From the sequence record LR745208.1: a stretch of 64,000 nucleotides of DNA; one strand, written 5' to 3'. Shown here piece after piece: positions 3,877 to 39,764 of this stretch. The position numbers and the translations under genes are program-made. Numbering within the stretch: the stretch's first letter is position 1; every line of letters starts with the position of its first letter. Under the pieces are notes generated by a model, which worked only from the letters and a program-made list of their open reading frames with translations, was not told the DNA's origin and did not search any database.

Positions 3877-3907
3877 CTAAAAAGTAGGTGCCCCATGCCG
3901 ATAGGGT
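3877..3907 (+). promoter_or_regulatory. sigma28 (FliA/SigD/WhiG)-type promoter, copy 1
   Basis: CTAAAAAGT-aggtgcccca-TGCCGATAGGGT, i.e. TAAA-N15-GCCGATAG, 17 nt before ATG 3925; the conserved blocks and spacer length are identical at 39734-39764. Confidence 0.75.
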
Positions 3908-3924
3908 TATGAAGGACATCCCCA

Positions 3925-4452
3925 ATGAAGACCGCAACGTTTCTGCTCTGCCTTGCCACCCTGCTAGTCCCAGTCCCCGGGCTCAGCCAGCCCGCCGCCA
4001 GGGTCCCCCCTGTGGTCGTTTCAAGGACGGTCCATGAATCCCCCGTCCCCACCACGGGTAACAACGACTTCCGCCTCCTGTGGGCTGAAGAGGTGGTTCG
4101 CATCGGTCCAAGAGTGGAATCACGACTGTACCTGGAACTCCACGACGCCTTCAGAGAGCCAGACCTGTTGGCTCGCATCGAGATCCGTGAAGCCCGTGGG
4201 TACCAGTTCTGCAACCCCCTCACCAATCCCGGAGCGTGGCGTGCCAGCCGTACCCCCGCCCTGATGGGGGTGGCCTGTGCCATGGGCAACAACGTCAGCA
4301 CCGCGGTAGCCATTTTCCGCACAGGCCCTGGGCACCTGACCATTCACGTCATCGCCGAAAGCCAGGAGTTCGTCCTGGACACCCTGGACATCCCACCCAC
4401 GGAAACTCTCTCCATTCCCGGAACGGAAGCATGGCATGTTGAAGTAGACTGA
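3925..4452 (+). CDS. Secreted/periplasmic hypothetical protein (175 aa)
   Basis: N-terminal signal peptide MKTATFLLCLATLLVPVPGLSQ; GAAGGA SD; first gene after the promoter. Confidence 0.65.
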   Translation: MKTATFLLCLATLLVPVPGLSQPAARVPPVVVSRTVHESPVPTTGNNDFRLLWAEEVVRIGPRVESRLYLELHDAFREPDLLARIEIREARGYQFCNPLTNPGAWRASRTPALMGVACAMGNNVSTAVAIFRTGPGHLTIHVIAESQEFVLDTLDIPPTETLSIPGTEAWHVEVD

Positions 4453-4464
4453 CCATCCCACGGT

Positions 4465-4953
4465 ATGGTTGGCATGCACCTGGAAATGGTACCTGAACCC
4501 ACCAAAAGTTGGAGCCTCAAATCGGAACTGGGAGCCAAGCAATGGACCCTACTCAATCAGGTTGTGTGCCAACGGGCCAGCAATCGCTGTGAGGAATGCC
4601 TGTGTTCCTCCCAAATCGAATGCCTGGAGCAATGGGAATACAACGACACCACCCACACCCAAACTCTGGTAGGCTTCAAGGCTCTATGCCCCGCCTGCCG
4701 TGAAGTAAGAGACTTGGGCCGTGCCTGTTCCAGGGGCGATGGAAAACGGGTAGCATCTCACCTTCAAGCTCTTAACCGATGGTCGCCAGAGGAACTTGAC
4801 GCCCAAATTGAAAAGGCATTTGACGTGTGGATGGAACGATCCGCACATGACTGGACTCTCGACCTCCGGCTACTTGTTGTCGTCCAAACCGACCCGGAGA
4901 TCATCGGCCGATCTTATTGGATGCCCTTTCAACTTGGGCAGCCTGCGAATTGA
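4465..4953 (+). CDS. HNH-family zinc-binding protein, apparently catalytically degenerate
   Basis: LEMVPEP...RCEEC...ECLEQWEYND..TQTLVGFKALCPACREVRDLGRA...AFDVWMERSAHDWTLDL matches the layout of a common phage HNH family (ECHE.W.YD...LC..CH.VKH.G), but the histidines are replaced. Confidence 0.65.
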   Translation: MVGMHLEMVPEPTKSWSLKSELGAKQWTLLNQVVCQRASNRCEECLCSSQIECLEQWEYNDTTHTQTLVGFKALCPACREVRDLGRACSRGDGKRVASHLQALNRWSPEELDAQIEKAFDVWMERSAHDWTLDLRLLVVVQTDPEIIGRSYWMPFQLGQPAN

Positions 4954-7900
4954 GCCGGTTGGTTCCTGTTGTGTTCGTCAGGTTGCTCGCCAGACTATCC
5001 GCCTGAGACTGAACCCCGCTCGCAATTGACTGCCATCCCGACACACTATCCAAGAGGGAGCGGCGCCCACTGCCTGTGGTAATACCCCGTAGAGCCGACT
5101 GAGCGGCTGCCCAGGCAGGTGCCGCCTGTACCATCTGCCCCGCCACCCATCGAGCCGCATCATCCGGAGTCTGGACACTCACGAAGGTAGTGTTCTCAGC
5201 TCCAGACATATAGGCCGCTAGAAGCAGATCCGCCTCAGCCCCACGACAAGCACAGGAATCCTGGCCCCCCAATGGGTCCCCCATTGGAGTCAGGTCGGTG
5301 AGGTTGAAAGCTGCGTTATTGACCGGGAGCTTCATCACGGCATCACGATCCGACATGATGTAGTTACGCAGCCCATTAGCGATCTGGGTTGTACGGGTCC
5401 CCGTGGCACCGGCTGTTGGGTTCTCTGCCCACTGCAATACCCTTTGGGCACCTTCTGCGAATTGAGGGTCGGCCGCAATTCGAGCCAAGACCCTGGCTTC
5501 AGTATCCGCATCCTGCCTGCGCATTGCCCTCAACAGAGCTTCCAGGTCTGCCGGGTTGGCAAAACGAAGGGGGTCACTTGACATCAACCGCTCGTAGTTG
5601 CCCCCCGGCTCGATGGAGAGCCCCCGGCCATATTGGTAGGACCCATAATGCTCATAGCCCTTGGCGTCGGACACGGGAAACACAGGGGAAAAAGTAGCGT
5701 TGTCCACAGAGGCGAACCGGGTTTCTGTGGACCTCTGGAAGGGCCTGCTGTTTGGAAGGGGCCTCCCAGCAAACAATGCCGTGATGGAATCCTCCCAGGG
5801 ACGAAGAAGCTGTGTTATTGTGGCTGGGATCTGAGTGGTTCTTGAGGGGAGATCCTGCAATGCAGAAATAGCTTGGGCCAGAGCCTCACTGTTTGCCTGA
5901 CTCACCTCTTGCACCAAAGCATGGGCCTTGGCACCTAGCACCGTCATAGTATGATGCCTGTTGGTCAGCATCCCGGTGTTGCTTGGGTCCACGTCATTCG
6001 GGGTACCATTTGAGATATTGGGGGTTCCATCAATGGGACCTGTAGCAGTATTGAGGTTGGCGATGCCTGTGATGGCCCCCTGAATTGCCTCGGAGGGGGG
6101 CCTAATCATTGTCATGTTCCCCAACACGGCCGCCATGTTGTTGGTTAGAGCCCGGACAAGGGATGTTGCAGTGCCTGCGAGGCAACTGTTAATGAAAACA
6201 ATGGCCGACTGTGGGGTGTGCCCAACGGCGAGAACCGTGGAGGTTCCCCTCGTGGGCCTACTGATCTGACTGGTACCAAACGTAAGGGACACAATCTCAC
6301 TGGTAGGCACGATCCTGGTGTTAGTGAAGGTACGGACCCGCAACCCTTTGGTAGGACGGTGTTTGGTGCCTATTTCCACGAAGTCCTGGCGCCTATCCTC
6401 AGGAAGCCCCTCAATGTTTGACGCCTGACGAACCACCGTTGTGGTCAAGTCCTCCTCCGGGTTCACATGGGTGCTACTACTCTGGGTCCCTGGGGTTGGG
6501 GCTGTATCCTCCGTTGTCTGGCTCTGAGGGATCCACTCCCTAAGGGAAGTTGTCGCCAATCTGTGGATGTTACGGGCATACTGCCCCTGATCCCCGGTGG
6601 AATATCCACTTCTCGATAACTGCGGGGCATACAGGTCAATGTTCCCTGTGGTCAGTACCTGATCAATTGCCTCTCCGTGGTTATGCAGGAGGTTTCGCAA
6701 GTAGTCTCTGGACCCCTCTTCTGCTGACCCATATGCCCTAAACCAAGCATTAGTATCATGAAGGGTTACAGTACCATCCGCATTTGTGGTTCCCTCCTGG
6801 GTTCCAAGATGTACTCTCCCACCCACCCAACGGTTTCCTGCCTTCACCCCTCCAAAATTGAAGTTATACATACCCTGACCACGAGCACCATTCTCCAGCG
6901 CCCACTGGGCTGACATTACAGCCAATACAGCATCTGGAGGAGATTGCCCCCGCTCTGCAATGTATGCCTGCCGCAAATACCGCACAGCTTCCTGTGGGCT
7001 CATCTGGGTGTGCTCTGCACGTTGATCCCCAGATAGGGTGGGTGAGTCCGATGTGGGGGTCGTGGTAGTCCCACCACTCGTTGTCGGCCTAGTGATATCA
7101 GCATCCCCTTGTTGAGCCGGATTGGGGTGGGAGGCGGAATAATAGCGGTACTGTCCTGGGGTGTTGACCGACATTGATGCCTTACGGTCTGACAGTAGCT
7201 CCAAAGTATTAGAGGACAGGTTGATGGTGCCGGTGGGGTCGAAGTCCATATCCCTTTGAACTGCTCCGGTCGAGCGGGTTTGAAGCTGTTGGATCAGGTA
7301 GGAAAGCAATACCACCTTGTCATTGTCCTGCAATGTGGTCGCATGACTAGATAGGCTGCTCGGATGGGCTGTGTGGTTGCCATTCACCTCATGAAGAATG
7401 TGTTCCACCGCAGTGAACTGATTGGCATAGGCAAGCAAAATGTCATTCTGTGTACCAGATGGGTCCGATGGGGGGGAGTCAAAATTTGTGGTCAGAGTTG
7501 TAAGCCGTTGTCGGGCGGTATCCAATTCAGATTGAAGGTGTGCAACATCCACATGCGAAGGGGCCCGGGGCCTGGGTGCCGGGTGAGGGGCCGTTGCAGG
7601 AGTGGTGGCCGGTGGTGTGGCCGGAGGCGTTGGGGCCGCTGGGGTAGCTGCGGGTGTAGCTGGGGCCGGATGGGTGCCCGTGCGGGGTCTCGTCGGTGTC
7701 GTTGTAGCCGGTGCTTGCACCCCCCCAATGTTTGCCAATTCAGCCGCCTGAATTTGACGCTCAAGCCTCTCCACCGTGGCACTGAGTGTTGTGATGCTGG
7801 TCTGCGTGAGGTCTCTGGTGGTAATGAAGGTGCCCAGAGCCCTAGTAAGGTCGGCCTCATTCACCGTGAAGGTGCTAAATTGGCTTCCAATAGCGACCCC

Positions 7901-9958
7901 CCATGATTGGGTAGTTGAGTTGCCAGTACTTCGATAATCGGTATTTCCCCTCGCTGAGGATGTTGAGGCCCCCTCATTTCCAGGGGATATAAGCACACCA
8001 CGCTCCAACAGGGCTTGAATGAATCCCCCAATGAAGGTCTGACGCCGGGCATCTGTTACCTCCCGTCGATTGGTACCTGTGGTGGCTGTGAGGTTTCTAG
8101 ACTCCGCTCCAAACCCATACGAGTAGAACATCGGGTTGATGTGCATAGGGTCAAGCGCCATGACCACGTTGGGGAACCCTATTAGCCGTGGGATCCCACT
8201 ATTGTCAAGGACCTGGAGAGGCCGGGGAGACATGTTGGTCTTATCCAACTGCACCTGGGGAAGGTCTGCCCCAACGGATGCCCCTGAGTTGTCTCCCGGT
8301 GGGATGAACTTCCTTCGGCGAGCCGTCAACGACAGGGTCGTGGTGCACTGGCCCCCAAAATTGAAGGCATGCGAGATGGACTGGACATAGTAGTAACAAT
8401 CAATGTGGGGGATGTATACGGGGTAGCCTGGACGAATCTCAGGCCGAAGTGGGATCGTGATCGAACAAGCGTTCACCCCCGCATTGATCCGGTCTAGCTG
8501 TGAGATGCCAAAGAAGAAGGCTGACTTGGCATTGTTGTAGTAGGTTGACTCGATGGAACTTTCGCGCCACCCATATTGGGCCACGAGTTTGTAGTCTACG
8601 TATGTGGACCGGGTACCCCACTCACTCTCGTCCACCAACCCACGGGTGTTCTGGAAAGCCCCTCCCTTGATGATGATGTATGTGGCCTCCGGCTCGGTCT
8701 CCGTAAACGAGATGGAGATGATGTCAATGGGCTCGATACGATAAACCCGCGAGGAGCTGGTATCCAGGTTGAACAGTGGGGGCTTGAAGACAAGGTCCCC
8801 GTCCACATCCTGGTAGAACTCATAGCCCGTGACCCCCGTCACCGAGGTAGCAATGTCAAGTTTTGACTCATAGGTGGACTCAAACAAGTTCACCTGCCCA
8901 TAGCTACCATAGTCAGTGGCGAAAGCTTGAAGCTGTTGGGCATTCGTACTGAGGCGGCTCCCATTTTCCGAAGGCAGCAATCGAGTTGCTTGCCTGAGGA
9001 CCCGACTATCAACCAAAGAACTGAGAGGGATGTCCTGGGCAAATGGGTCCCCAGATGGGCGGGCCGTTGCAGCACTGTGTCCAGCAATGTGCTGGTGACC
9101 CCCCTGGGCACTAGACCCTGAACCATAGAGGGACAGGAATGCCTGTTGGGAGGATGTGAAAAGCTCTCCCGTCGCCCCGTGCATACGGAGCCCATAGATA
9201 CGGCTGCGGAACCGCTGCTCCCAGTAACGGATAGTCAGTGCATACAGGGAGTCTCCCGTAGTCGCATTGACAGCCCCATAGTTGGACCTGCTAGACAGGG
9301 CAAACCCCACACCGGCTGCGGCCCCCGCAGTATCCCTGTAGAGGGAGTACATGATCGAATAAGGGGACTTGCCAGACAGGGGATGCCCTGTAACGGTGGT
9401 GTGCACCCCGCTGTTTGTGGGTCTTGCCCCGAAGAACGAACCAGAGGTGGAAAACTTGAGGTGCTGCCAGAAATGGAGCATCCCGTTACAGGTCAGGGTG
9501 GCCGAGTAGTATCCCCCCGAATACTCATAGCCAACCGAAGTCACTACCCCGTGAAACACTGGGTAGTAGGGATATTGGGGGATGTCTCCAAGGTTGATGC
9601 CACCAACCGCTGTGGGGGCATTGGAGGTAGTCATTCCCTTTACGGGGAAGTACCCTCGGAAATAGATATGTACCTCCAGCCCCGTCCTCAAGAGGGTGTT
9701 CCCATCCCTGAAAATGGAGTCCCCATAGGTCCGTGGGACTGCCAGGGAGATGCTGGAGTTGGAGGCTCCGGGCTCGACCCCACAGTCAATCGAGACAGAT
9801 GTCACGAACTTTTGGATGTCGATATTTCTACGGCATTGCCTGCAACCTGGAAGAGAAGTGTCCCCGTTGAGGTACACAAGAAAATCGCAGACCGTTTGCA
9901 CAACCTCCCTCTTGTTGGGAGCCCAGGTTCCAGCGTAAGGTCGATTGACTATGGACAT
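4901..9958 (-). CDS. Baseplate hub / central tail protein with inserted GH73 glucosaminidase-like domain (1685 aa)
   Basis: Position after the TMP and tube initiators; N-terminal hub-like region (FYQDVDGDLVFKPP, ITIPLRPEIRPGYPVYI); Pro/Thr/Ala linker; internal GH73 motifs. Confidence 0.7.
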   Translation of the reverse strand: MSIVNRPYAGTWAPNKREVVQTVCDFLVYLNGDTSLPGCRQCRRNIDIQKFVTSVSIDCGVEPGASNSSISLAVPRTYGDSIFRDGNTLLRTGLEVHIYFRGYFPVKGMTTSNAPTAVGGINLGDIPQYPYYPVFHGVVTSVGYEYSGGYYSATLTCNGMLHFWQHLKFSTSGSFFGARPTNSGVHTTVTGHPLSGKSPYSIMYSLYRDTAGAAAGVGFALSSRSNYGAVNATTGDSLYALTIRYWEQRFRSRIYGLRMHGATGELFTSSQQAFLSLYGSGSSAQGGHQHIAGHSAATARPSGDPFAQDIPLSSLVDSRVLRQATRLLPSENGSRLSTNAQQLQAFATDYGSYGQVNLFESTYESKLDIATSVTGVTGYEFYQDVDGDLVFKPPLFNLDTSSSRVYRIEPIDIISISFTETEPEATYIIIKGGAFQNTRGLVDESEWGTRSTYVDYKLVAQYGWRESSIESTYYNNAKSAFFFGISQLDRINAGVNACSITIPLRPEIRPGYPVYIPHIDCYYYVQSISHAFNFGGQCTTTLSLTARRRKFIPPGDNSGASVGADLPQVQLDKTNMSPRPLQVLDNSGIPRLIGFPNVVMALDPMHINPMFYSYGFGAESRNLTATTGTNRREVTDARRQTFIGGFIQALLERGVLISPGNEGASTSSARGNTDYRSTGNSTTQSWGVAIGSQFSTFTVNEADLTRALGTFITTRDLTQTSITTLSATVERLERQIQAAELANIGGVQAPATTTPTRPRTGTHPAPATPAATPAAPTPPATPPATTPATAPHPAPRPRAPSHVDVAHLQSELDTARQRLTTLTTNFDSPPSDPSGTQNDILLAYANQFTAVEHILHEVNGNHTAHPSSLSSHATTLQDNDKVVLLSYLIQQLQTRSTGAVQRDMDFDPTGTINLSSNTLELLSDRKASMSVNTPGQYRYYSASHPNPAQQGDADITRPTTSGGTTTTPTSDSPTLSGDQRAEHTQMSPQEAVRYLRQAYIAERGQSPPDAVLAVMSAQWALENGARGQGMYNFNFGGVKAGNRWVGGRVHLGTQEGTTNADGTVTLHDTNAWFRAYGSAEEGSRDYLRNLLHNHGEAIDQVLTTGNIDLYAPQLSRSGYSTGDQGQYARNIHRLATTSLREWIPQSQTTEDTAPTPGTQSSSTHVNPEEDLTTTVVRQASNIEGLPEDRRQDFVEIGTKHRPTKGLRVRTFTNTRIVPTSEIVSLTFGTSQISRPTRGTSTVLAVGHTPQSAIVFINSCLAGTATSLVRALTNNMAAVLGNMTMIRPPSEAIQGAITGIANLNTATGPIDGTPNISNGTPNDVDPSNTGMLTNRHHTMTVLGAKAHALVQEVSQANSEALAQAISALQDLPSRTTQIPATITQLLRPWEDSITALFAGRPLPNSRPFQRSTETRFASVDNATFSPVFPVSDAKGYEHYGSYQYGRGLSIEPGGNYERLMSSDPLRFANPADLEALLRAMRRQDADTEARVLARIAADPQFAEGAQRVLQWAENPTAGATGTRTTQIANGLRNYIMSDRDAVMKLPVNNAAFNLTDLTPMGDPLGGQDSCACRGAEADLLLAAYMSGAENTTFVSVQTPDDAARWVAGQMVQAAPAWAAAQSALRGITTGSGRRSLLDSVSGWQSIASGVQSQADSLASNLTNTTGTNRLNSQAAQVERASNKIGR
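6560..6990 (-). other. GH73 (FlgJ-like) peptidoglycan hydrolase domain within the hub protein
   Basis: AQWALENG, NFNFGGVKAG..W.G, GTQE, FRAYGSAEEG.RDYL..L, LSRSGYSTG..QYA correspond to the GH73 motifs AQAALESG, NLFGIKA, FRxYxS, GYATDPxYA. Bounds approximate. Confidence 0.75.
7560..7710 (-). repeat. Low-complexity Pro/Ala/Thr linker repeats in the hub protein
   Basis: PAPATPAATPAAPTPPATPPATTPATAPHPAPRPRAP. Confidence 0.7.
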
Positions 9959-9961
9959 GTC

Positions 9962-11966: not shown

Positions 11967-14900
11967 CTAGGCGTTAGACCCAACCCGGTTAGGCTGGATT
12001 CCAGATTGTTGGAGGACCCTTCGCACTACGTCATACACTCTACGCTCGTCCCCACCGTAGATATTGACGTGAACGTTGCCACCACCACCTGACCTAGCAA
12101 TTGGACCCCCAGGCTTCGAGCCAACCACTTGATCCTCTCTATCAATTGGAGTAATGATGGGTCTCCCGCCACCGTTCTGGTAGACGAAGTCATGGGCAGC
12201 AGGGGCCACTGAGGCACGGGCCGAATTCAGGGTACCGAGCATCCTAGTGATATTGGCATCACCCGCCACATTGGTCCCAGCCGCCGAGCCGGTCTGCATG
12301 ATCCTGTTAATAGTGTCCGGGTCAATATCTTGTCCCACAAGGGTGTCCCGCAACTGGAGCTCATAGTTGGCTTGCGCGTTTGCTCTCCCGAGATCCATAG
12401 GCAAACTACTATTGCCAAGGGCATCACCGACGGCATTTCCTGTGAACAATCTTGTCTGTGCTCGTGCCACCCGTTTTGTTTCTCTTAGTGCCCGCTCACC
12501 CTGGGCTTGGGCGGTATCCGTAATAGCTGTGGCATCTGCTGAGGGCCGATTTGAAGCCTCTGGAGTTGCCGAGGGGGCACCTCCCCCAGGCATTACATCA
12601 GCCACAGTTCTCCCAGACACCCCGGCCCCAGACATTAGGTTTCTGAGGTATTCCGTGGGAGAAGCAGTGGTTGTGCGAGTCGTAGGCCGCCCCGGGGTTC
12701 TTGCGGCATCCCCAACCCCAAACATGTTCTCCAATCTGGTAATTACCCCACCACCCCCCTCAAGCAATTCGGAATCCTGTTGCTGAGGAGCTACCGTTAC
12801 GGTCCGCTCAACCCCCGTCATATCCCCAGTAGACAATCTCCGTTGGGCATCTGTTAAGGTGTCTCTCCTTCTTCTGGACTCCTCATACCTGCCCCGAAGG
12901 CCAGTCAGCTCTCCCTGAAGCACCCTCTTCCTAGCTATCGTGGTATCTGCGGATGAAGCCTCCCGCTCACGCGTCTTTATCTGACCGGAGATATTGGAGG
13001 CAGCTTCCTGTTCATGCCCCAACTCTTCACGAATTCCCCCACGGATCTCTGTAGCTGCGGCTCTCCTTGCCTCCCCAGCCGGATCCAATTGCTTGCCGAG
13101 CCATTGGATCAAAGGCTCCCCAACATTTTCATACAGGGATCGCGTGTAGTATAGGAGCTTGTTCTCAACAACATCGGCGAGAGAGGTTGTAGCCTCCATC
13201 GTCTGAAAAGCCAGTTCCGTTTGCTCATCCCGGGTCTTTATCTCATCCGCCCCCGATTGCTGCATGTAGGACAGAAGAAGCCCATTGGAGTCGGAGATCA
13301 CCTGCCCTGTACTAGAGGACACCACCTCCCCGCTACTGTTAATCTCTGCCCCCAATTCACTTGCCATCCGGGAGTTTTCCTCAGCGGTTACATTCCCCCT
13401 GGCCTGAAGGGCTTGCAGTCGAGTGAATCCCCCCCTCATGTTGAAGGCAAGTGTAGACAAAGCATCGGACTGAGGACCGGATACACCAATGAATGCCTCA
13501 GCCCCCGCCCTCTCTGCACCAGACAACTCATCAAATCCTCTACCAAAATGCTCCTGAATAGTGGCCAAACGTAGTGCAATTGACCCCCTAGGACCAAGGG
13601 CCTGGAAGGCGTTTGTCTGTGCCCCAATCCCCCCCTGAGTGGCGCGAGCGAGCTTCACCATTTGTTCCATCTGTCTACCCAAGTTGGATAGTTGTGGGTT
13701 GGAACTGCTAGTAAGGGTATTCACCATGGCTGCTTGCTGACCATGTGACATCGAGTTCATCTGATGAATCAGGTTTTGAGATGCCTCCTCTGCTTGATCC
13801 GAGGATGCTGTGCCTGCCCGCTCTATTGCATCTACAAGGGGCCCACTTCCCAACGCCACAGTAAGGTCATTGATCATGGACCTCCCCCCAGTACCTCCGG
13901 AGGTGGCTGTTGTACCAAGGGATCTGGCTTGTGAAACTGCCTCCCTACCAATAACTCTCCTGGTTGCCCTACCTCCCACCAAAGCCGTCCGCATTCTCTC
14001 TTGGGTGTTCATCTGGCTTAGGTCACCCCCATACTGACCAACCATCTCGGTGGCTTTCTTGGCCCCCATGATCTTCGTCATCTTCATAAGAAGGTCGGCA
14101 GTATCCTCCAACCTAACATTCAGGGAAGACTGGCCAGCTGTTGCCTGGACAACCATCGAATAGAAGCGTCTGGTTCCAAAAGCACTCTGTGATGCCATCT
14201 TCGAGATGGTGGCAAAAGAGTTGTTGACCGTCTCCAGACTCATACCAAGGTCATTGACATAGTTGGTCAGATTATCAGCATACTCTGTGAGCCCCACACC
14301 TGTCGCATTTGCAACCCTATGGATATCTGCCAGTGTCGTGGACAACTCCCTCTGGGCTACCGCAGCATTGGTTGAGCCGCGGGTAAGTCTATCGAGTGTG
14401 ATACCCCCTTTGTCCAAGGCGTCAAAAAGAGCCATTGCCTCCTCTTGATTAACCCCGAAGTTAGTCATCAGGTCGGTAACAGTATGGTTCAAGATGCGAA
14501 GACCCTTGGACAGATCTCCAGACCCTAAACTGGCCAAGGTAAGAGCCCCAAAGGTCTTTACCGTCGACCTATTGAATTCCTTGATCTTCTTGTCGGTGTC
14601 AAACATCACCCCGGCAAAAACACCAAGCATCCCAATGATGGCCCCAAGCGGACCCAGGAGCATCTTGAATGCCCCACCGGCCTTATCCCCTATAGACCCC
14701 AGACCTTTCCCCAAAGCGGCCCCTAGACTCCGGGCAATTGCCCCTGAATCAATACTGCCTGTCAGCTTGGAACCGAAGTTATCAGCTACCCCGGTAATGG
14801 TCTCCGCGAACTCCTTCGATGTCTTCTCCAGGTACCAAGCCATGACCTTTGAGGACTTCTCAGCCTTCTTCATGCCATGGACTACATCCGTAAGTTCCTC

Positions 14901-17633: not shown

Positions 17634-17681
17634 CGTGTGATGTGGTACCCCTCACCATACCAACCAAATAGGAGCTACCAC

Positions 17682-25473: not shown

Positions 25474-25833
25474 CTAGACTCGCCAGTATATACTGGATAC
25501 CGGGACCGGAACTTGTTGGTAGAGAATGGTGGGGATCTCGGTTCCAATAATTGTTATGCTTCCAGTTGTGTCCCCAGTATATACCGCTGGCCTACACTGT
25601 GCACACACGCACATGCATACGGTCCCGCAGTGGCATCCCGTCAACTGCACAGAAGTAGGTGACACCGGAAATGCTTGGTACTTCAAGTACCAAAAGTCAT
25701 CCTGTGGGCCTACCTGTGTCTCAACCACACCGAGACCTCCACATGGCTTACACTTGGTGAACTTACTGGGCTTCGCCCGATGAGGACGAGTTCCATAACC
25801 ATCACAAACCATACACTTTTCCATGACTTGCAC
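25474..25833 (-). CDS. Small Cys-rich zinc-binding protein with two DnaJ-type CxxCxGxG motifs
   Basis: CMVCDGYG and CKPCGGLG, plus CHCGTVCMCVCAQC. Confidence 0.55.
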   Translation of the reverse strand: MQVMEKCMVCDGYGTRPHRAKPSKFTKCKPCGGLGVVETQVGPQDDFWYLKYQAFPVSPTSVQLTGCHCGTVCMCVCAQCRPAVYTGDTTGSITIIGTEIPTILYQQVPVPVSSIYWRV

Positions 25834-32494: not shown

Positions 32495-32531
32495 ATGAGG
32501 TATGGCTTAAAGGTGGGATACCGAGATTGGG

Positions 32532-35003: not shown

Positions 35004-35080
35004 TTGTGTTTCCTCGATTAGGTTACACTACCCAGGAGGCACCAGACCACAAATGGCAAAAGGGAGTGACAGGTAATGTC

Positions 35081-35341
35081 CTAAACTGGAACCCGCTTCT
35101 TCCGGCAATTGATGTCATGTCCGCGGCACTGCATGGTAGCGGAAGGAAGGGATTTGGCCCAAGAGAACCACTCGCAAGTGGAGTTCTCCTCATGTCTCGC
35201 CAACCACACCAAACCTACATCCCGCACCCGCTCCGCCAGGAGATCCGGGTCATGGTAGCGAACTTCGTATCCCTGAGGAAGCCTAGGCTCCGTCTGAGGG
35301 GTCGTGAGTTTCGGGGGGTTGGATCCACGGGGGGGCATCAT
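35081..35341 (-). CDS. Hypothetical protein (86 aa)
   Basis: ATGA overlap with the upstream gene; fills the gap before the vWA gene. Confidence 0.4.
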   Translation of the reverse strand: MMPPRGSNPPKLTTPQTEPRLPQGYEVRYHDPDLLAERVRDVGLVWLARHEENSTCEWFSWAKSLPSATMQCRGHDINCRKKRVPV

Positions 35342-35784
35342 TTCCTCTTATCAAACAGATCACTGAAGTCGTCAAAAGCTGTTTCCTTTGACTTGATTTC
35401 TGGCCTGATCTCGGGATCTGGATTTGCTGTGGGGGTATATGTCATGCCATAAGGGATTGTGTCTTTTAGCACAATTTCCATCTCAGGGATATCTTCCCAC
35501 GTATCGAAGGGCATCATCTTCACAAACCTACGATAACCATAGGCTTCCAGGATCAACTGTCTCAAGTCCGCCCTAATATCATTGGCAAAGGAGGAGCAAA
35601 TTCGGTCGATCTCCGATTCAGCCTCTATGTCCGTAGACCCAAGATGCCCCTTGATAACTCTTCGACGTTCCAGCAATGCTGAGAGACGAGCAGTCAACTT
35701 CATCTGGTAAGAAGCAATCAGATGAACAGGACCACCAATATTCTCCAACTCTTGAGTGGGGGTTTTCTTGGGGCCTGTGCTCAT
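35338..35784 (-). CDS. Hypothetical protein (148 aa)
   Basis: Helical ORF in operon context. Confidence 0.55.
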   Translation of the reverse strand: MSTGPKKTPTQELENIGGPVHLIASYQMKLTARLSALLERRRVIKGHLGSTDIEAESEIDRICSSFANDIRADLRQLILEAYGYRRFVKMMPFDTWEDIPEMEIVLKDTIPYGMTYTPTANPDPEIRPEIKSKETAFDDFSDLFDKRK

Positions 35785-35807
35785 ACTTCAGTAAAGGTAT
35801 GACTACT

Positions 35808-36608
35808 TCACCGAGCCATGAAGGGCTTCCCCATGAGGGCCAAGGAGCCTTCCAATTGAGGCATCTGCTCGTAATGGGCTGCCCTGAGGGCCACATTCAG
35901 GTTTGTCACCACCTGTGTCATCGGGGCTCCAGGACTCCGTACCAGTTCCTTCAACAGGTAGTACGTACAGGCCCCGTTGTATCGGCCATTGATGAAGGCA
36001 TCAGCCGATGTCTGGTTGCTCTTGCACCCACTGATCAGAGCCACGTTGAGGGGCACTCCCGGCATCCCAAGACCCATTCCCTGTGGGGTGATACCCGCCT
36101 CCTTGGCCGTCTGGACCCCCCAGCTAATGTCCTCAGGCATTGGCATCGAACGGGGAACGGAGTTGCTGAAGGAGCGATCCAGCGTTCCACTGTGACAACT
36201 ATCGGAAACCCATACAAAATTCACCCCGACTGGCACTTTGGAGAACATCTGATTGAACTCCTTATCCCGAATCATCGTGTCATCAGACCAGTTGAAGTTT
36301 TGAGGGCAAATTGCCTCATCCAAATTGTCCACTTCTCCCGCGGGGTTACGAGTGGGGACCTGCACCCCATGCCCTGAAAAATGGAAGAACAACCTATCCC
36401 CTGGCTTGGCTCCGTCCACCAACCAGTGCAACCTGTCGACAATTGCCTGCTTGGTCGCCCGACCATCCACCAAGAGCCGAATGTTGGCCCTCGGCATGGT
36501 ACAATGGTCCATCAGATAGTGGGCCATGTCTGTGATATCGTTGACACACCCATTAAGAGGGCAGCCTGGGTACTTGTTGATCCCAACCATCAAAGATTTA
36601 TCAGTCAT
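35808..36608 (-). CDS. Metacaspase / peptidase C14 (caspase-like)
   Basis: ALxxGINxY-like KSLMVGINKY, LNGCVND, catalytic His in HFSGHG, catalytic Cys in DSCHSG, SGCKSNQTSAD, QMPQLEG. Start placed at MTDKS. Confidence 0.92.
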   Translation of the reverse strand: MTDKSLMVGINKYPGCPLNGCVNDITDMAHYLMDHCTMPRANIRLLVDGRATKQAIVDRLHWLVDGAKPGDRLFFHFSGHGVQVPTRNPAGEVDNLDEAICPQNFNWSDDTMIRDKEFNQMFSKVPVGVNFVWVSDSCHSGTLDRSFSNSVPRSMPMPEDISWGVQTAKEAGITPQGMGLGMPGVPLNVALISGCKSNQTSADAFINGRYNGACTYYLLKELVRSPGAPMTQVVTNLNVALRAAHYEQMPQLEGSLALMGKPFMAR

Positions 36609-36631
36609 GCTAGAGCCCGATGATAGACGGC

Positions 36632-37165
36632 CTAATGAGAAACGAACGGGATACACCTGTAACTGAGTCGGCGCCCGGCACCCACCAAAAAGGAAACCCC
36701 AGTCCGCTTCCAGATCTCGGTTGTGAGGGCCAGACGGGCCTCCTCATCCATGTCATCGAGGATATGCTCGGTATAGAACTTGTGGGTCAGGGAGGGCCCC
36801 TCAGGACGTGGCTCCCCAGGAGTGCAGATCCCGTTCACGTAGTGGGCACTGCGGACTGTAGGCACACCAGCTAATGGGTTGGGAATGCCAGACACATACA
36901 GCTTGTGGGGCCAGCCATACTTCCAGTCTGCCACTTCCATGGTGATCAGGTCGGGATGTGCCTGTGTGAGGTTGAACAGGTCCTCGGGGTTCAAAGATCC
37001 ACAATAATCGCAGGTCCTGAAGGGGTAGATGTAAGGCCCATAGTCATCGGGACGGGCAACACAGCCCTTCGCCGACACCTCAGGTGCCCGCCATAGCCCC
37101 TTGGCTAGATGAATGAATGGACTGGGAGTTCCCTCGTGACAAGTATGTCGGTCTGGCCATCGCAT
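36632..37165 (-). CDS. Hypothetical protein with CxxC motif (177 aa)
   Basis: RTCDYCGSL...ADWKYGWPHKLY; ORF in operon. Confidence 0.55.
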   Translation of the reverse strand: MRWPDRHTCHEGTPSPFIHLAKGLWRAPEVSAKGCVARPDDYGPYIYPFRTCDYCGSLNPEDLFNLTQAHPDLITMEVADWKYGWPHKLYVSGIPNPLAGVPTVRSAHYVNGICTPGEPRPEGPSLTHKFYTEHILDDMDEEARLALTTEIWKRTGVSFLVGAGRRLSYRCIPFVSH

Positions 37166-37194
37166 GATGGACCATACCCACCATCCCAGGAGCC

Positions 37195-38679
37195 CTAGCT
37201 ATCTGAAATGCTGTAGGGGGCTGGCTTGGCCCGGAGAGCCTGTTTGCGGTGGCTTGCCCGCATCTCCGCGTGGTGCTTGGCGTCATCGGTCTCCCCCACA
37301 GCCTCATATGCCTGTTGGGCCATGTGATGGGCATGGGCAGCATCGAAATGCTGCTCCTTGTCAAAATCCTCCTCATCAGAGGCCATGGAGAGTTCGTTGG
37401 CCAAGTTGGCCCACTGGAGAGCTGATTTGCCCTTGAACAACTTGGATGACTGCAAATACTTGGAGGCTATTCTGGCAGCAGATTGGGACATGACTACTCC
37501 TCCTGACTCTCTCGAAGCCATCGTGGTCAATTCCGCTGGGGTGAACACCGCTTGAACAATGTCCGATGCCTTGGCCCATTCGACCCGGGCATCATAGCCC
37601 GCAACAGGTCCCAGCATGGAGGGTTGCTGTCGCCAATTGTCCAAATGTTTCAACTTCCCACCCAGCCTCGAAACCACAGACCCAATGGCTGGGCGAATAT
37701 CCTCCGGCTCCTCCCCACGAGCCAAAGCACTACGGTCCAACAACTCCCCATAGAAGGTTAGGGCACTTGAAAAAACGGCACCCTTAGCGATGAACTCGGG
37801 GAAGATTTCAAGGAGCCCCACACTTGGTGCATTCCTATTGAGGTAAACCTGAATTATGTCCTCCAGCTCCTCGCTGAATGGACTGTACAGTGCCCTATCA
37901 TCCAGGAAGAATTCCTTAGGCATTCGAGTCACAAGTGCGCCCAAAACCAACTCCGGCGTTGGTGCCTTCAGTTTCTTTAGGACAGCCCAGATTCCGGCCC
38001 CAACCCCCTCTGACAACCACTTCTTGTTCTCGGGCCGAGAGAAGTACTTGACCAGCCAATTCTGGACCGTCCCCGTCAATGCAGCTTGATGCCTCGCGGC
38101 TACCCTGGCTGCTTGAGAACCCATTGACACATTCTTTCTATCATCTCCGACCCAGAACCCCACCTCATTGAAGGCCACCGGAACCGCGTCCACCCTCTGT
38201 AGGGGCATATCAGCATCCTTGGGCGTGTAAGACAGGGTCATGTGAGGAGTATACCCATGGTTATCTTTCCAGGTCACCCCAAGGATCTTGAGAGCTTGGC
38301 CCACCCGGTCCCGGAACTCATTGAGCCCTGGCACATCCACACTGAGGAAGACCGGGTCTCCCCCATCCTCAGCCTGCCCAGCAAACCGCCCAATACCTCC
38401 CAGGACCCCCACTAAAGGCTGACTGGAGGCTGCTACCTCTCGGAGGACACCCAAAATAGCGTCGGGTGATACCGCAAGGTCAGCTGCCTTACCAAGGGCG
38501 AACAGGGTAATGTGCAGGTTTTCCACGGGCTCTGCACCCTCCCCCTCCAAGACAACCTGATTGGCTACCTCAACGGGAATGGGCAGACAGATCATCGATC
38601 CAGTATGGGCTGCCTCAAGAGCCCTACGAGCTACTTTGTGCACCAACAGGGTGTGCATTATGGGGTCCCACACGGGCAT
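37195..38679 (-). CDS. Multidomain protein with N-terminal 2H phosphoesterase (2'-5' RNA ligase/Acb1-like) domain
   Basis: Two HxT motifs, NLHITLF (~38501-38520) and TPHMTLSY (~38227-38250), with typical spacing; two further unknown domains. Start ATG 38679 (TTG 38688 or ATG 38658 possible). Confidence 0.85.
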   Translation of the reverse strand: MPVWDPIMHTLLVHKVARRALEAAHTGSMICLPIPVEVANQVVLEGEGAEPVENLHITLFALGKAADLAVSPDAILGVLREVAASSQPLVGVLGGIGRFAGQAEDGGDPVFLSVDVPGLNEFRDRVGQALKILGVTWKDNHGYTPHMTLSYTPKDADMPLQRVDAVPVAFNEVGFWVGDDRKNVSMGSQAARVAARHQAALTGTVQNWLVKYFSRPENKKWLSEGVGAGIWAVLKKLKAPTPELVLGALVTRMPKEFFLDDRALYSPFSEELEDIIQVYLNRNAPSVGLLEIFPEFIAKGAVFSSALTFYGELLDRSALARGEEPEDIRPAIGSVVSRLGGKLKHLDNWRQQPSMLGPVAGYDARVEWAKASDIVQAVFTPAELTTMASRESGGVVMSQSAARIASKYLQSSKLFKGKSALQWANLANELSMASDEEDFDKEQHFDAAHAHHMAQQAYEAVGETDDAKHHAEMRASHRKQALRAKPAPYSISDS

Positions 38680-38706
38680 CTCTCTCAATGGGTCGGGATA
38701 GGCCAG

Positions 38707-39120
38707 TTAACCGCCCGGCTGGAACGTGGTGATCTCCTGCTCAATAATGAGGTCCCTCAAATTTGGGTGTAGATGCCGCATCTTAGCCACCAAGATCCTG
38801 TTGTGTACTAGAATGTCCTTAGGGGCAACAATCGCTGTTCGAATGAGGATGTCATCACTGTCATTGAAGGAGGCGTTTAGCACGTCCCCAATATTGTCCA
38901 CCCAAGAGAGCAGGAGCTTGGATTTCTCAGGGCCAGGGTTTTCAACGTATCGCCAAAGCTGGATTGGGGATGTGGGTCGGAAAGGGGACAACTCCTCAAT
39001 AACCCTCTGTGGAGGAAGCCCCCGGGGTGCATGTAGCATCCACTCCTGAAGCCAGCCCATAGTTTCTTGGGATAGAGGCTTCAAAATCGCCCTTGCTGCC
39101 ACCCGTTCTACCAAGCCCAT
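38707..39120 (-). CDS. Hypothetical protein with N-terminal RVAAR motif (137 aa)
   Basis: MGLVERVAARAIL...; ORF in operon. Confidence 0.55.
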   Translation of the reverse strand: MGLVERVAARAILKPLSQETMGWLQEWMLHAPRGLPPQRVIEELSPFRPTSPIQLWRYVENPGPEKSKLLLSWVDNIGDVLNASFNDSDDILIRTAIVAPKDILVHNRILVAKMRHLHPNLRDLIIEQEITTFQPGG

Positions 39121-39126
39121 AGCAGG

Positions 39127-39378
39127 TCAGTCCCATAAGGGGCCTAACGAGACCTGCCGTTGCCCCGTGTAAGAAAACAACCGGCCAAACTTCCGGATCC
39201 CCTCTTCCGTCAGCACCACTGTTAGTGCCTGCGCCCTGGGGATGACGTATCGGTCTCCCGTCTTGGGATCGAAATAGATGCAGCTGTCCTCGGTGCTGTC
39301 CATTGACAACTTGAGGGCCCCGACTCCTGGGTTGTCCGCCGAAGGTGCTGGAATGGTTTCGGGGACTACTGCGTCCAT
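39127..39378 (-). CDS. Hypothetical protein (~83 aa)
   Basis: Start placed at MDAVVPE, directly after the upstream stop. Confidence 0.45.
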   Translation of the reverse strand: MDAVVPETIPAPSADNPGVGALKLSMDSTEDSCIYFDPKTGDRYVIPRAQALTVVLTEEGIRKFGRLFSYTGQRQVSLGPLWD

Positions 39379-39380
39379 CG

Positions 39381-39671
39381 TCAATCCTCCTGGAATTCCG
39401 TAGTACACAGGTACCCAGGACCCATTGCACGGGCCCACTCATCCATGGTCTTGGTCACCTCAACGGCCCCCGGCTCCTTGGGGTCACACATTGTACCATG
39501 TGTGACCACACCATTCTTGAAGGCAATCCCAAAGGGCTTCCAGGAGGGACACTCGGCCCAACCCGCCATGTCCTCCGCCTCATACCCGGTGGCAACCTGA
39601 AGGAGAGCCTCAGCCTCCTCCGCGGATCCAGCCACAACATAATCCACCTCCGAATAACACCACACAGCCAT
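39381..39671 (-). CDS. Hypothetical acidic protein (96 aa)
   Basis: First gene on the minus side of the divergent junction. Confidence 0.55.
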   Translation of the reverse strand: MAVWCYSEVDYVVAGSAEEAEALLQVATGYEAEDMAGWAECPSWKPFGIAFKNGVVTHGTMCDPKEPGAVEVTKTMDEWARAMGPGYLCTTEFQED

Positions 39672-39733
39672 CCGAAAAACCTCAACCTTTCCGCTATCCC
39701 TCTACCTTACACTCATAGGAGCATCATTTAGTC

Positions 39734-39764
39734 CTAAAAAGTTGCCTTCTCGTGCCGATAGGGT
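39734..39764 (+). promoter_or_regulatory. sigma28 (FliA/SigD/WhiG)-type promoter, copy 2
   Basis: CTAAAAAGT-tgccttctcg-TGCCGATAGGGT followed by GAGGA SD and ATG 39778; same blocks and spacer length as 3877-3907. Confidence 0.75.

What the first reader, a model, noticed from the sequence alone, without database searches (positions are those of the whole stretch)
3877..39764. Twin sigma28-type promoters head both plus-strand islets
Seen: CTAAAAAGT-N10-TGCCGATAGGGT at 3877-3907 and 39734-39764. All 21 block positions are identical, the 10-nt spacers are unrelated, and each copy is 13-17 nt before the first ATG of a plus-strand islet. Established: TAAA-N15-GCCGATAA is the sigma28 (FliA/SigD/WhiG) consensus, and these read TAAA-N15-GCCGATAG. 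Inference: the accessory genes (secreted protein, dead HNH, acidic protein, DUF6900, alarmone hydrolase) are transcribed by host flagellar/sporulation sigma28 or by a phage-encoded sigma28-like factor. That would be unusual for a phage and is a clue to the host. The -10 half read on the other strand is CCCTATC, so each site may also serve the divergent late genes.
Basis: partly seen in the sequence, partly recalled or inferred. Interest (0 to 1): 0.7.

Follow-up and report, generated by a model that had tools for sequence, protein, structure and literature searches.

The report
Two copies of phage promoter cassette
The two identical motifs are almost certainly promoters, but they are only two of about 57 copies of a promoter cassette used throughout this 485-kb uncultured phage, and it is more likely read by a sigma factor the phage itself encodes than by the host's flagellar sigma-28.

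Summary
CTAAAAAGT-N10-TGCCGATAGGGT occurs exactly twice in the window (3877-3907 and 39734-39764, + strand), 17 and 13 nt before the first ATG of the two plus-strand islets.

The window is LR745208.1 (485,034 bp, uncultured phage). Genome-wide the motif is not a twin. There are 55 ungapped matches plus 2 with a 1-nt longer spacer, against 0 in a reversed-sequence control. 47 lie in the first 160 kb, nearly all intergenic and co-oriented with a small ORF.

The full cassette is CGATTTC-n-CTAAAAAkT-N10-T(G/A)CCGATAGGGTrTTGAGGA-N5-10-ATG. It fits sigma-28 geometry (TAAA-N15-GCCGATA), but several results argue against sigma-28:
- No group-3 sigma or RNA polymerase gene was found.
- Related phages carry the homologous cassette with CGTTAG, TGTTAG or CGTGGT in place of CCGATAG.
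- In two relatives the ATG sits exactly 7 nt after that hexamer, a leaderless-promoter geometry.
- The phage has one divergent ECF-like sigma gene (record 74150-74884), behind a consensus sigma-70 promoter.

Best reading: a phage-sigma-dependent early/middle promoter class, of which two copies drive accessory islets inside the late region. Host sigma-28 stays possible. The divergent late genes have their own TGTA(T/A)GGT elements, so dual use is not supported.

The parts
3869..3875 (+). Upstream box CGATTTC of cassette copy 1. It falls at about -43 to -37 relative to the predicted start.
   Evidence: Conserved in most of the 55 copies (column counts). CGATT is also conserved in the cassettes of related phages.
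3877..3885 (+). -35-like box CTAAAAAGT of copy 1.
   Evidence: TAAAAA is near-invariant across the 55 sites.
3896..3907 (+). -10-like block TGCCGATAGGGT of copy 1. The core hexamer CGATAG is at 3899-3904.
   Evidence: T-R-CCGAT is invariant and the following AGG nearly so across the 55 sites. The register is fixed by the leaderless geometry of homologous cassettes in L118 and L120.
3911..3916 (+). Predicted transcription start (3911 or 3912) and the Shine-Dalgarno-like GAAGGA. The ATG is at 3925.
   Evidence: Inference from -10 geometry. The purine-rich, C-free block recurs at a fixed distance in the family.
3925..4953 (+). Islet 1. Gene 3925-4452 encodes a 175-aa protein with an N-terminal signal-peptide-like sequence. 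Gene 4465-4953 encodes a 162-aa HNH-endonuclease-like protein.
   Evidence: ORFs, translations. PHROG 5200 HNH endonuclease, E 2.6e-25. No Pfam hit for the first gene.
39734..39742 (+). -35-like box CTAAAAAGT of copy 2. There is no CGATTTC upstream; the sequence there reads ATCATTTAGTC.
39753..39764 (+). -10-like block TGCCGATAGGGT of copy 2. The core CGATAG is at 39756-39761.
   Evidence: The 31-mer 39734-39764 is identical to record position 12950.
39768..39772 (+). Predicted start (39768 or 39769) and the Shine-Dalgarno-like GAGGA. The ATG is at 39778.
   Evidence: Inference, as for copy 1.
39778..42536 (+). Islet 2, seven tightly packed genes:
- 39778-40065: acidic 95-aa protein
- 40071-40334: DUF6900
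- 40331-40954: HD-domain phosphohydrolase
- 40951-41214
- 41244-41495
- 41465-41824
- 41838-42536
   Evidence: Pfam DUF6900 E 4e-22 and HD_4 E 8e-11. PHROG 990 metal-dependent phosphohydrolase. The ATG at 40331 overlaps the preceding stop.
3840..3847 (-). TGTATGGT, a separate promoter-like -10 element for the divergent minus-strand gene 2980-3774.
   Evidence: The motif class [GT]GTA[AT]GGT has 24 intergenic copies against 6.1 expected, mostly before minus-strand late genes.
39704..39711 (-). TGTAAGGT, a separate promoter-like -10 element for the divergent minus-strand gene that starts at 39671.

Best explanation
The two motifs are two members of one promoter class of the phage LR745208.1.

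Each is a compact cassette: CGATTTC box, then CTAAAAAkT (-35 position), a 16-nt gap, the CGATAG hexamer (-10 position, inside T-R-CCGATAGGGT), and a purine-rich start region rTTGAGGA that doubles as the ribosome-binding site. An ATG follows 5-10 nt later.

Proposed mechanism:
1. Host core RNA polymerase is directed to these cassettes by the phage's own divergent two-domain (sigma2+sigma4, ECF-like) sigma factor.
2. That factor is encoded at record 74150-74884, outside the window. It is itself preceded by a consensus host sigma-70-type promoter.
3. Transcription is predicted to begin about 7 nt after CGATAG, at window 3911/3912 and 39768/39769. This gives very short leaders that begin at the GAGGA.

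The class drives about 57 mostly one-gene units of small early-region ORFs. Two copies sit inside the late structural block and let the two plus-strand accessory islets be expressed with the early/middle class, independently of and opposite to the surrounding late genes.

What is shown and what is inferred:
- Shown: the copy number, placement and orientation of the cassette; its homologues in related phages; the presence of one sigma-like gene.
- Inferred: that this sigma reads the cassette; the start sites; the temporal class.
For: Cassette behaves as a promoter class:
- The PWM gives 55 sites at more than 12 bits, against 0 in the reversed sequence (maximum 11.4). 47 lie in record 1-160 kb.
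- Two further sites have a 16-nt spacing.
- 51 of 55 have an ORF starting within 45 nt (median 17 nt). Median ORF length is 82 aa.

Relatives carry homologous cassettes:
- They keep the same CGATT box and spacing but have the hexamers TGTTAG, CGTTAG or CGTGGT.
- In L118 and L120, 8 and 12 copies place the A of ATG 7 nt after CGTGGT. This leaderless geometry fits a promoter and fixes the -10 register.

Architecture fits ECF-type promoters:
- ECF promoters have CGT or CGw at -10, a 14-17 nt spacer, and adhere closely to consensus (PMC5758882).

The sigma candidate:
- It is a single copy. The A3 profile hits it at E 4.7e-50; the next hit is E 1.3.
- Its family has 602 cluster representatives.
- Of 134 members scanned, 38 hit Pfam Sigma70_r2 (best E 1.3e-6), 11 hit Sigma70_ECF and 6 hit Sigma70_r4_2.
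- In the AF2 model, 8 of the 13 Foldseek matches are sigma-factor structures. They include the phiEco32 gp79-dependent open complex, BldN, SigH, SigL, FliA and SigC sigma4.
- TTGACA-N16-TATATT (11 of 12) lies 59 nt upstream of the gene.

No competing machinery found:
- No RNA polymerase or other full sigma was found.

Precedent:
- Phage 7-11 gp47 reads GTAAtg-N16-aCTA while its early genes use host sigma-70 (PMC8948821).
Against: - The phage's own protein gives no direct Pfam, PDB or hhalign hit to sigma factors. The assignment rests on transitive homology.
- All Foldseek matches are non-significant (best E 0.88), and the model is of modest quality (mean pLDDT 62.5).
- Nothing links this sigma to this cassette except co-occurrence.
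- The sigma4 helix (WGQRVL) is the same in relatives whose -35 boxes differ: CTAAAC, CTAAG, TTTAGA, GGTTAC. There is therefore no clean covariation.
- Relatives carry more than one cassette class.
- Many sigma-bearing loci show no cassette within 10 kb.
- The conserved CGATT box at about -40 is not explained by a sigma alone.
- The sigma-70-type promoter before the sigma gene is not conserved in relatives (2 of 27).
- The exact 11-of-12 match to the sigma-28 consensus in this phage remains a striking coincidence under this model.
Confidence: 0.55

Rival explanations
1. Host sigma-28 (FliA/SigD/WhiG-type) holoenzyme reads the cassettes directly. The phage's main early gene class would then be tied to the host's motility or sporulation state.
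For: - 31 sites match TAAA-N15-GCCGATA exactly.
- The geometry is identical to P. aeruginosa fliC: -35 TCTAAAG, -10 GCCGATAA.
- CCGAT is invariant and the following A nearly so (53 of 55) in all 55 sites.
- The host is unknown, so a motile host cannot be excluded.
Against: - Homologous cassettes in related phages lack the sigma-28 -10 core. They have CGTTAG, TGTTAG or CGTGGT, with T where the flipped A-11 would be.
- 21 of 55 sites have A instead of the extended -10 G.
- Position 8 of the octamer is G in 51 of 55 sites, where the consensus has A.
- Invariant bases lie outside the sigma-28 consensus: the T before the octamer, the GG after it, and CGATTTC.
- About 57 promoters of the main small-gene class would depend on a conditionally active sigma held by an anti-sigma. 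This last point rests on established FliA/FlgM biology, not on a test here.
Confidence: 0.15
2. Host primary-sigma holoenzyme uses TAGGGT as a TAnnnT-type -10. A phage DNA-binding factor bound at CGATTTC and/or CTAAAAA replaces the -35 contact, in the manner of T4 MotA/AsiA sigma appropriation. The tandem sigma4-like protein at record 419691-420284 is a candidate for that factor.
For: - TAGGGT has T-12, A-11 and T-7 in many copies.
- TAGGG is shared by this phage and several relatives.
- In L086 a TTGACA lies 17 nt upstream of a TAGGGG.
- The CGATT box at about -40 is the one element conserved in all lineages.
- The phage encodes a 197-aa protein with two Sigma70_r4-like HTH domains (Pfam E 3.4e-10). 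Its best PDB matches are SigF and FliA region 4.
Against: - The T at the -7 position is not conserved. It is G or A in many copies, and relatives have TAGGGG.
- This register would place the start inside or beyond GAGGA and lose the ribosome-binding site.
- The L118 and L120 cassettes have CGTGGT, not TAnnnT, and their leaderless ATG fits the CGxxxx register.
- The tandem sigma4 gene sits in an operon with a clamp loader and a NusG-like gene. That fits a late-transcription role better.
Confidence: 0.15
3. A phage-encoded RNA polymerase reads the cassette, starting at the GGG after ATA as in T7-type promoters (TATAGGGAGA). It could be a single-subunit or an unrecognised enzyme, possibly injected with the DNA.
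For: - ATAGGG followed by a conserved purine-rich stretch resembles the start region of T7-like promoters. This is a resemblance from memory, not a test.
- A 3642-aa orphan ORF (record 230286-241214) has no Pfam, PDB or phage homologue. It is the size of known virion polymerases.
Against: - phmmer with T7 RNA polymerase finds nothing.
- There is no NADFDGD-type or D-x-D-G-D polymerase motif in a plausible ORF.
- Conservation extends to about -45 as discrete boxes with fixed spacing, which is typical of sigma-dependent recognition.
- The L118 and L120 cassettes lack the GGG yet keep the geometry.
Confidence: 0.05
4. The cassette is not primarily a promoter. It could be an RNA-level or recombination element, such as a translational operator or a junction sequence for shuffling small genes.
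For: - The cassette includes the ribosome-binding site and lies at a fixed distance from the ATG.
- A C/T-rich spacer faces a G-rich downstream block.
- Copies flank single small genes, as the promoter-stem-loop cassettes of T4-type phages do (from memory).
Against: - The bipartite boxes with rigid spacing, the strict co-orientation, and the leaderless geometry in relatives (ATG 7 nt after the hexamer) are promoter properties.
- A recombination role would be additional to a promoter role, not an alternative to it.
Confidence: 0.05

Closest known systems
Sigma-28 (FliA/SigD/WhiG) promoters, TAAA-N15-GCCGATAA
   Same: Same two boxes and same spacing. Both window copies read TAAA-N15-GCCGATAG, and 31 genome copies match TAAA-N15-GCCGATA.
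   Different: - The last base is G, not A.
- The first G is A in 21 of 55 copies.
- There are extra invariant bases and an extra CGATTTC box.
- The cassette occurs about 57 times in a phage that has no detectable group-3 sigma.
- Homologous cassettes in related phages do not have the sigma-28 -10 core.
Phage-encoded sigma systems: phage 7-11 gp47 (GTAAtg-N16-aCTA) and phiEco32 gp36 (tAATGTAtA)
   Same: - A phage sigma of the sigma-70 family redirects host core polymerase to a phage-specific promoter class.
- Early genes use host sigma-70 promoters (PMC8948821).
- The Foldseek top match of the candidate is a chain of the phiEco32 gp79-dependent open complex.
   Different: - Those phages have 6-8 such promoters before late genes. 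Here about 57 stand before small early-region genes.
- The promoter sequence is different.
- There is no detectable sequence similarity to gp36 or gp47.
- The function is untested.
ECF sigma promoters (B. subtilis sigma-W TGAAAC/CGTA, sigma-X CGAC/CGwC)
   Same: - Bipartite with a rigid 16-17 nt spacer.
- A -10 that begins CG(T/A).
- Very close adherence to consensus (PMC5758882).
- Relatives have CTAAAC or GGTTAC at -35 and CGT at -10.
   Different: - In this phage the -35 box is CTAAAAA, without the AAC hallmark.
- The cognate sigma is far from any curated ECF group and reaches Pfam sigma models only through relatives.
T4 early and middle promoters (MotA/AsiA appropriation; promoter cassettes flanking small early genes)
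   Same: Many near-identical promoters, each heading one small early gene. A possible extra factor box lies upstream of -35. This comparison is from memory and was not tested here.
   Different: No MotA or AsiA homologue was looked for or found. The -10 is not TAnnnT in all copies.

Membership tests
Sigma-28-dependent promoter | TAAA at -35 and GCCGATAA at -10, separated by 15 nt | tested here: met
   Both window copies and 31 genome copies match TAAA-N15-GCCGATA. The eighth base is G in 51 of 55 copies. Reference geometry from PMC12784957.
Sigma-28-dependent promoter | A group-3 sigma encoded by the phage to read it | tested here: not met
   phmmer --max with E. coli FliA, RpoD, RpoE and an RpoH-like protein was run against all six-frame ORFs of at least 50 aa. 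The only hit is a sigma4-only protein at E 0.14.
Sigma-28-dependent promoter | -10 core (CGA with A at -11) kept in homologous promoters of related phages | tested here: not met
   Relatives have TGTTAG, CGTTAG or CGTGGT at the aligned position.
Sigma-28-dependent promoter | Transcription dependent on host sigma-28, with a start 7-8 nt after the octamer | not testable with these tools
   The host is unknown, the phage is uncultured, and no transcript data are available.
ECF-type sigma promoter | Bipartite, rigid 14-17 nt spacer, -10 beginning CGT/CGw | tested here: met
   CTAAAA-N16-CGATAG here. CTAAAC-N16-TGTTAG, CGTTAG and GGTTAC-N17-CGTGGT in relatives. Criteria from PMC5758882.
ECF-type sigma promoter | AAC motif in the -35 box | tested here: inconclusive
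   Absent from most copies in this phage (CTAAAAAkT). Present as CTAAAC or TTAC in relatives.
Sigma-70 family, ECF-like (the 244-aa protein, record 74150-74884) | Sigma region 2 and region 4 domains | tested here: inconclusive
   - There is no direct Pfam or PDB hit.
- Among 134 homologues, 38 hit Sigma70_r2, 11 hit Sigma70_ECF and 6 hit Sigma70_r4_2.
- The AF2 model has two helical domains.
- 8 of 13 Foldseek matches are sigma structures, but all have E of 0.88 or more.
Phage sigma cascade (phiEco32 / 7-11 / SPO1 type) | Host-type promoter before the phage sigma gene, and a phage-specific promoter class over-represented before phage genes | tested here: met
   - TTGACA-N16-TATATT lies 59 nt before the gene.
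- 10 of 20 TTGACW-N15-19-TAnnnT matches are intergenic, while only 10.5% of the genome is intergenic.
- 55+2 cassette copies.
Phage sigma cascade (phiEco32 / 7-11 / SPO1 type) | The phage sigma binds core polymerase and initiates at the cassette | not testable with these tools
   Needs in vitro transcription or reporter assays.
T7-type single-subunit polymerase promoter | A phage RNA polymerase gene and a contiguous -17 to +6 consensus | tested here: not met
   There is no T7-like polymerase and no double-psi-barrel catalytic motif. Conservation is in separate boxes out to about -45.

The most novel reading that the evidence does not exclude
The cassette really is read by the host's sigma-28-type holoenzyme. 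A 485-kb lytic phage would then have tied about 57 promoters of its main early gene class to the host's flagellar or sporulation sigma, for example because it infects only motile cells. The different hexamers in related phages would reflect switches to other sigmas.
Probability: 0.12. Interest if true: 0.75.

Novelty: new member of a known kind. Interest (0 to 1): 0.45.

Why it matters
Huge uncultured phages are known almost only from gene content, and their transcription programmes are unknown. This result gives one such phage a readable regulatory map with three promoter-like classes:
- a handful of host sigma-70-type promoters;
- about 57 copies of a phage-specific cassette before small early-region genes;
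- a TGTA(T/A)GGT class before late genes.

It also points to one candidate sigma gene. That gene belongs to a large, unannotated family (602 clusters at 50% identity), found on 24 IMG/VR loci whose contigs range from 24 to 536 kb, eleven of them over 200 kb.

If the sigma-cassette link holds, it would supply two things. The first is a way to sort genes of such phages into temporal classes from sequence alone. The second is a set of compact orthogonal sigma/promoter pairs.

The result also shows that a near-perfect match to a host alternative-sigma consensus is not a safe clue to the host.

Tried and rejected
- **Cassette pattern in public collections.** I searched IMG/VR, JGI metagenomes and GTDB genomes for CTAAAA-N13-GTRCCGATAGG. 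Only this phage (two records and one 1.7-kb fragment) carries full matches. The bacterial hits are singletons with no clear flagellar context, so they were no use as a positive control.
- **RNA polymerase genes.** T7 polymerase phmmer, catalytic-motif regexes, and Pfam on 23 large ORFs found none. The 3642-aa ORF has no homologue anywhere I looked.
- **Direct sigma tests on the 244-aa protein.** Pfam, phmmer and profile search against PDB, and hhalign against RpoE and FliA were all negative. A weak MazG-like match (E about 1.2) was not pursued.
- **Covariation between sigma residues and promoter boxes.** No clean signal. The sigma4 helix is constant where the -35 boxes differ.
- **Co-occurrence of sigma and cassette within 10 kb in 24 IMG/VR loci.** Only some loci show cassettes, so the test is underpowered.
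- **Conservation of a sigma-70 promoter before the sigma gene in relatives.** Not found: 2 of 27 against a 4% background.
- **Intrinsic terminators after the islets.** None above chance.

Full report
**1. Observation**

The motif CTAAAAAGT-N10-TGCCGATAGGGT is at 3877-3907 and 39734-39764 on the + strand. These are the only two matches in the window even with three mismatches allowed, and none is expected by chance. The first ATGs follow at 3925 and 39778.

The window is mostly minus-strand structural and tail genes. Pfam or PHROG hits include Glucosaminidase in a 1685-aa protein, Laminin_G_3 fibre-like proteins, VWA, head closure and a virion structural protein. There are two plus-strand islets, 3925-4953 and 39778-42536.

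- a protein with a signal-peptide-like N-terminus;
- an HNH-like protein;
- an acidic protein;
- DUF6900;
- an HD-domain phosphohydrolase.

**2. The pair is part of a genome-wide family**

The window is identical to LR745208.1, an unannotated 485,034-bp 'uncultured phage' record, at positions 310001-374000. The window contains no N. I fetched the whole record.

- The strict sigma-28 pattern TAAA-N14-16-GCCGATA occurs 33 times, 31 of them with N15.
- A 39-column matrix built from those sites finds 55 sites above 12 bits. The reversed genome gives none (maximum 11.4).
- 47 of the 55 lie in the first 160 kb. The strand switches in blocks that follow the genes.
- The other eight are at 197, 212, 314 (window site 1), 350 (window site 2), 426, 464 (a divergent pair) and 483 kb.
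- 51 of 55 have an ORF starting within 45 nt (median 17 nt). Median ORF length is 82 aa.
- Many consecutive small genes each have their own copy.

The full consensus is CGATTTC-n-CTAAAAAkT-N10-T(G/A)CCGATAGGGTrTTGAGGA-N5-10-ATG. T-R-CCGAT is invariant and the following AGG nearly so. The first base of the octamer is G in 34 sites and A in 21. The ten positions after the octamer contain no C at all.

Site 1 has the upstream CGATTTC (3869-3875); site 2 lacks it. Site 2's 31-mer, spacer included, is identical to the copy at record 12950.

**3. Is it a sigma-28 promoter?**

The match to the consensus is real. The P. aeruginosa fliC promoter has (-36)TCTAAAG(-30) and (-15)GCCGATAA(-8), the same TAAA-N15-GCCGATA geometry (PMC12784957).

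*No group-3 sigma gene.* phmmer with filters off, using E. coli FliA, RpoD, RpoE, an RpoH-like protein and T7 RNA polymerase against every six-frame ORF of at least 50 aa, gives nothing beyond one weak hit. That hit is a 197-aa protein at record 419691-420284.
- It has two tandem Sigma70_r4-like HTH domains and no region 2 (Pfam E 3.4e-10).
- Its best PDB matches are region 4 of SigF and of FliA.
- It lies in an operon with a NusG/KOW-like protein and an intein-bearing clamp loader.

*No RNA polymerase.* No catalytic motif of multisubunit polymerases was found. The large ORFs I scanned are replication and structural proteins, or orphans.

*Group-3 sigma genes are not rare in phages.* 183 phage records match FliA.

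**4. Other promoter classes in the same genome**

*Sigma-70 type.* Canonical sigma-70-type promoters exist but are few. Of 20 matches to TTGACW-N15-19-TAnnnT, 10 are intergenic, although only 10.5% of the genome is intergenic. Most read cTTGACA-N16/17-TATAcT. One is in the window at 44582-44609 (-), directly before the 477-aa homing-endonuclease-like gene.

*Late type.* A third motif, (T/G)GTA(T/A)GGT, has 24 intergenic copies against 6.1 expected. Most lie before minus-strand genes between 256 and 482 kb, and several sit 5-7 nt before the ATG.

Copies of this late-type motif lie at window 3840-3847 (-) and 39704-39711 (-), in the two divergent intergenic regions next to the cassette copies. 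The divergent late genes therefore have their own element. In addition, 42 of the 55 cassettes have a same-strand upstream neighbour.

**5. A candidate reader**

The sigma-70-type promoter at record 74943 (-) heads a 244-aa ORF (74150-74884). By eye its sequence resembles an ECF sigma:
- DIEDFIQELFRAIL...SSMGHMVHLIARCVISNMLRRDRRR;
- a C-terminal HTH-like QRAGRFLMLLEAGYSRRDAL...VIRKLREKF.

Direct searches fail: Pfam, phmmer and profile search against PDB, and hhalign against RpoE and FliA. A weak MazG-like match (E about 1.2) is the only alternative lead.

The indirect evidence is as follows.
- It has 31 homologues at 38-60% identity over the aligned part.
- A profile of them finds 602 cluster representatives at E up to 0.001.
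- Of 134 members scanned, 38 hit Sigma70_r2 (best 1.3e-6), 11 hit Sigma70_ECF (9.5e-7), 6 hit Sigma70_r4_2, and many hit C-terminal HTH models.
- An AF2 model of a 53%-identical homologue has mean pLDDT 62.5, with the C-terminal four-helix domain at 81-94.
- That model has two helical domains. 8 of its 13 Foldseek matches in the PDB are sigma-factor structures (the phiEco32 gp79-dependent open complex, BldN, SigH, SigL, FliA, sigma-70, SigC sigma4), but none is significant (best E 0.88).
- The phage has exactly one member of the family (E 4.7e-50; next hit 1.3).
- In IMG/VR the family lies on 24 loci whose contigs range from 24 to 536 kb; eleven contigs exceed 200 kb.

I therefore treat it as a divergent two-domain sigma, established by transitive homology and not directly.

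**6. Comparative evidence on the cassette**

Contigs of related phages that carry this gene (GC 60-68%) lack TAAA-N15-CCGATA. They do carry repeated intergenic cassettes that align with ours without gaps or with a 1-nt shift.

| Locus | Cassette |
|---|---|
| L085/L086, L089, L092, L105, L114 | CGATTTCgCTAAACACCCCC-N7-GAGAGTTGTTAGGGGTTGGAGG |
| L087 | CGATTGTTACTAAGCCCG...CCCGTTAGGGGGTGAAGG |
| L117 | CGATTTCCATTTAGAC...GCGTTAGTGGGTG |
| L118 (8 copies), L120 (12 copies) | CGATTCTTGGTTAC-N13-CTCCGTGGTG-N5-ATG |

The CGATT box and the overall spacing are conserved. The hexamer is CG(T/A)xxG. The 'GCC...A' that makes our copy look like sigma-28 is peculiar to this phage.

In L118 and L120 the A of the start codon lies 7 nt after CGTGGT in almost every copy. 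That is the geometry of a leaderless transcript starting at the ATG. It shows the cassettes behave as promoters, and it fixes the -10 register at the CGxxxx hexamer.

By homology, our starts are predicted about 7 nt after CGATAG. That is the G or A that opens GAGGA (window 3911/3912 and 39768/39769), so the ribosome-binding site sits at the very 5' end of a 10-17 nt leader.

The architecture fits what is described for ECF sigma promoters: a box at -35, a rigid 16-17 nt spacer, CGT/CGA at -10, and very close adherence to consensus (PMC5758882).

The closest worked example is phage 7-11. Its sigma gp47 reads GTAAtg-N16-aCTA, while its early genes use host sigma-70 (PMC8948821).

**7. What remains open**

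- The sigma-cassette link is inferred from there being only one full sigma-like gene, from co-occurrence in relatives, and from the promoter architecture.
- I found no clean covariation. The predicted sigma4 helix is the same in relatives whose -35 boxes differ.
- Relatives carry a second cassette class, GGGTTCCGTACC-N12-GGAAGGAG-ATG.
- Many sigma-bearing loci show no cassette within 10 kb.
- The CGATT box at about -40 calls for a further contact, by an activator, the tandem sigma4 protein or the alpha subunit.
- The host is unknown, so host sigma-28 cannot be excluded.

My probabilities are:

| Reading | Probability |
|---|---|
| Phage sigma | 0.55 |
| Host sigma-28 | 0.15 |
| Primary sigma plus a phage factor | 0.15 |
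| Unknown phage polymerase | 0.05 |
| Not primarily a promoter | 0.05 |

The rest is unassigned.

**8. Verdict**

The promoter reading is well supported. The sigma-28 assignment is a good description of the sequence, but it is probably not the mechanism. The divergent-use idea is not supported.

The two window copies are ordinary members of the class (49.1 and 45.7 bits; range 14.6-64.2). They place two accessory islets, embedded in the late block and transcribed against it, under the same control as the phage's small early-region genes.

This is a new instance of a known kind of system: a phage-specific promoter class with a phage sigma. The extra interest lies in its scale and in the large unannotated sigma-like family of huge phages that it points to.

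Noticed in passing
window 2971-2978, 3840-3847, 17654-17661, 25808-25815, 37171-37178, 39704-39711, 52332-52339 (all - strand): A second promoter-like motif, (T/G)GTA(T/A)GGT, precedes minus-strand late genes. Genome-wide it has 24 intergenic copies against 6.1 expected. In several cases the ATG follows 5-7 nt later, which suggests leaderless late transcripts and a host that translates them.
   Followed up: partly
window 44582-44609 (-), before gene 43142-44575: A near-perfect sigma-70-type promoter, TTGACA-N16-TATAGT, lies 6 nt before the ATG of a 477-aa homing-endonuclease-like gene. It is one of about 8-10 such promoters in the genome.
   Followed up: partly
LR745208.1 record 419691-422702 (outside the window; L009 19691-22702): A minus-strand operon encodes an intein-bearing DnaX-like clamp loader, a NusG/KOW-like 207-aa protein, and a 197-aa protein with two tandem sigma region-4-like HTH domains. 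It may be a late-transcription module reminiscent of clamp-coupled T4 late transcription.
   Followed up: partly
LR745208.1 record 230286-241214 (outside the window; L005 30286-41214): A 3642-aa ORF has no Pfam hit, no PDB sequence match, and no tblastn match in 50,697 phage records other than itself.
   Followed up: partly
LR745208.1 record 284-306 kb (L006, L007): Replication genes are heavily invaded by inteins and LAGLIDADG elements. DnaB, family A DNA polymerase, an SNF2 helicase and a UvrD-like helicase all carry them.
   Followed up: no
window 246-2627 (+): The string of small plus-strand ORFs at the start of the window overlaps a 1832-aa minus-strand ORF that runs off the window's left end and starts at 2965. 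They are probably not genes, so the window has only the two plus-strand islets.
   Followed up: partly
L086, L087, L117 (related phage contigs): Relatives carry a second repeated upstream cassette, tcGGGTTCCGTACC-N12-GGAAGGAGA-N5-ATG, before small genes. No counterpart was found in this phage.
   Followed up: partly
window 4901-4953: The HNH-like gene of islet 1 (+) overlaps the 3' end of the 1685-aa minus-strand gene by 53 nt, and no terminator was detected. Islet transcripts would therefore run antisense into the late genes.
   Followed up: no
window 37195-38688 (-): A 497-aa protein inside the structural block matches PHROG RNA ligase families over its N-terminal part (E 2.3e-18).
   Followed up: no
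L126 (IMG/VR contig of 234 kb carrying the sigma-like gene): About 12 copies of GGTTCGAnTC-type 9-mers within 20 kb look like a tRNA gene cluster next to the sigma-like gene.
   Followed up: no
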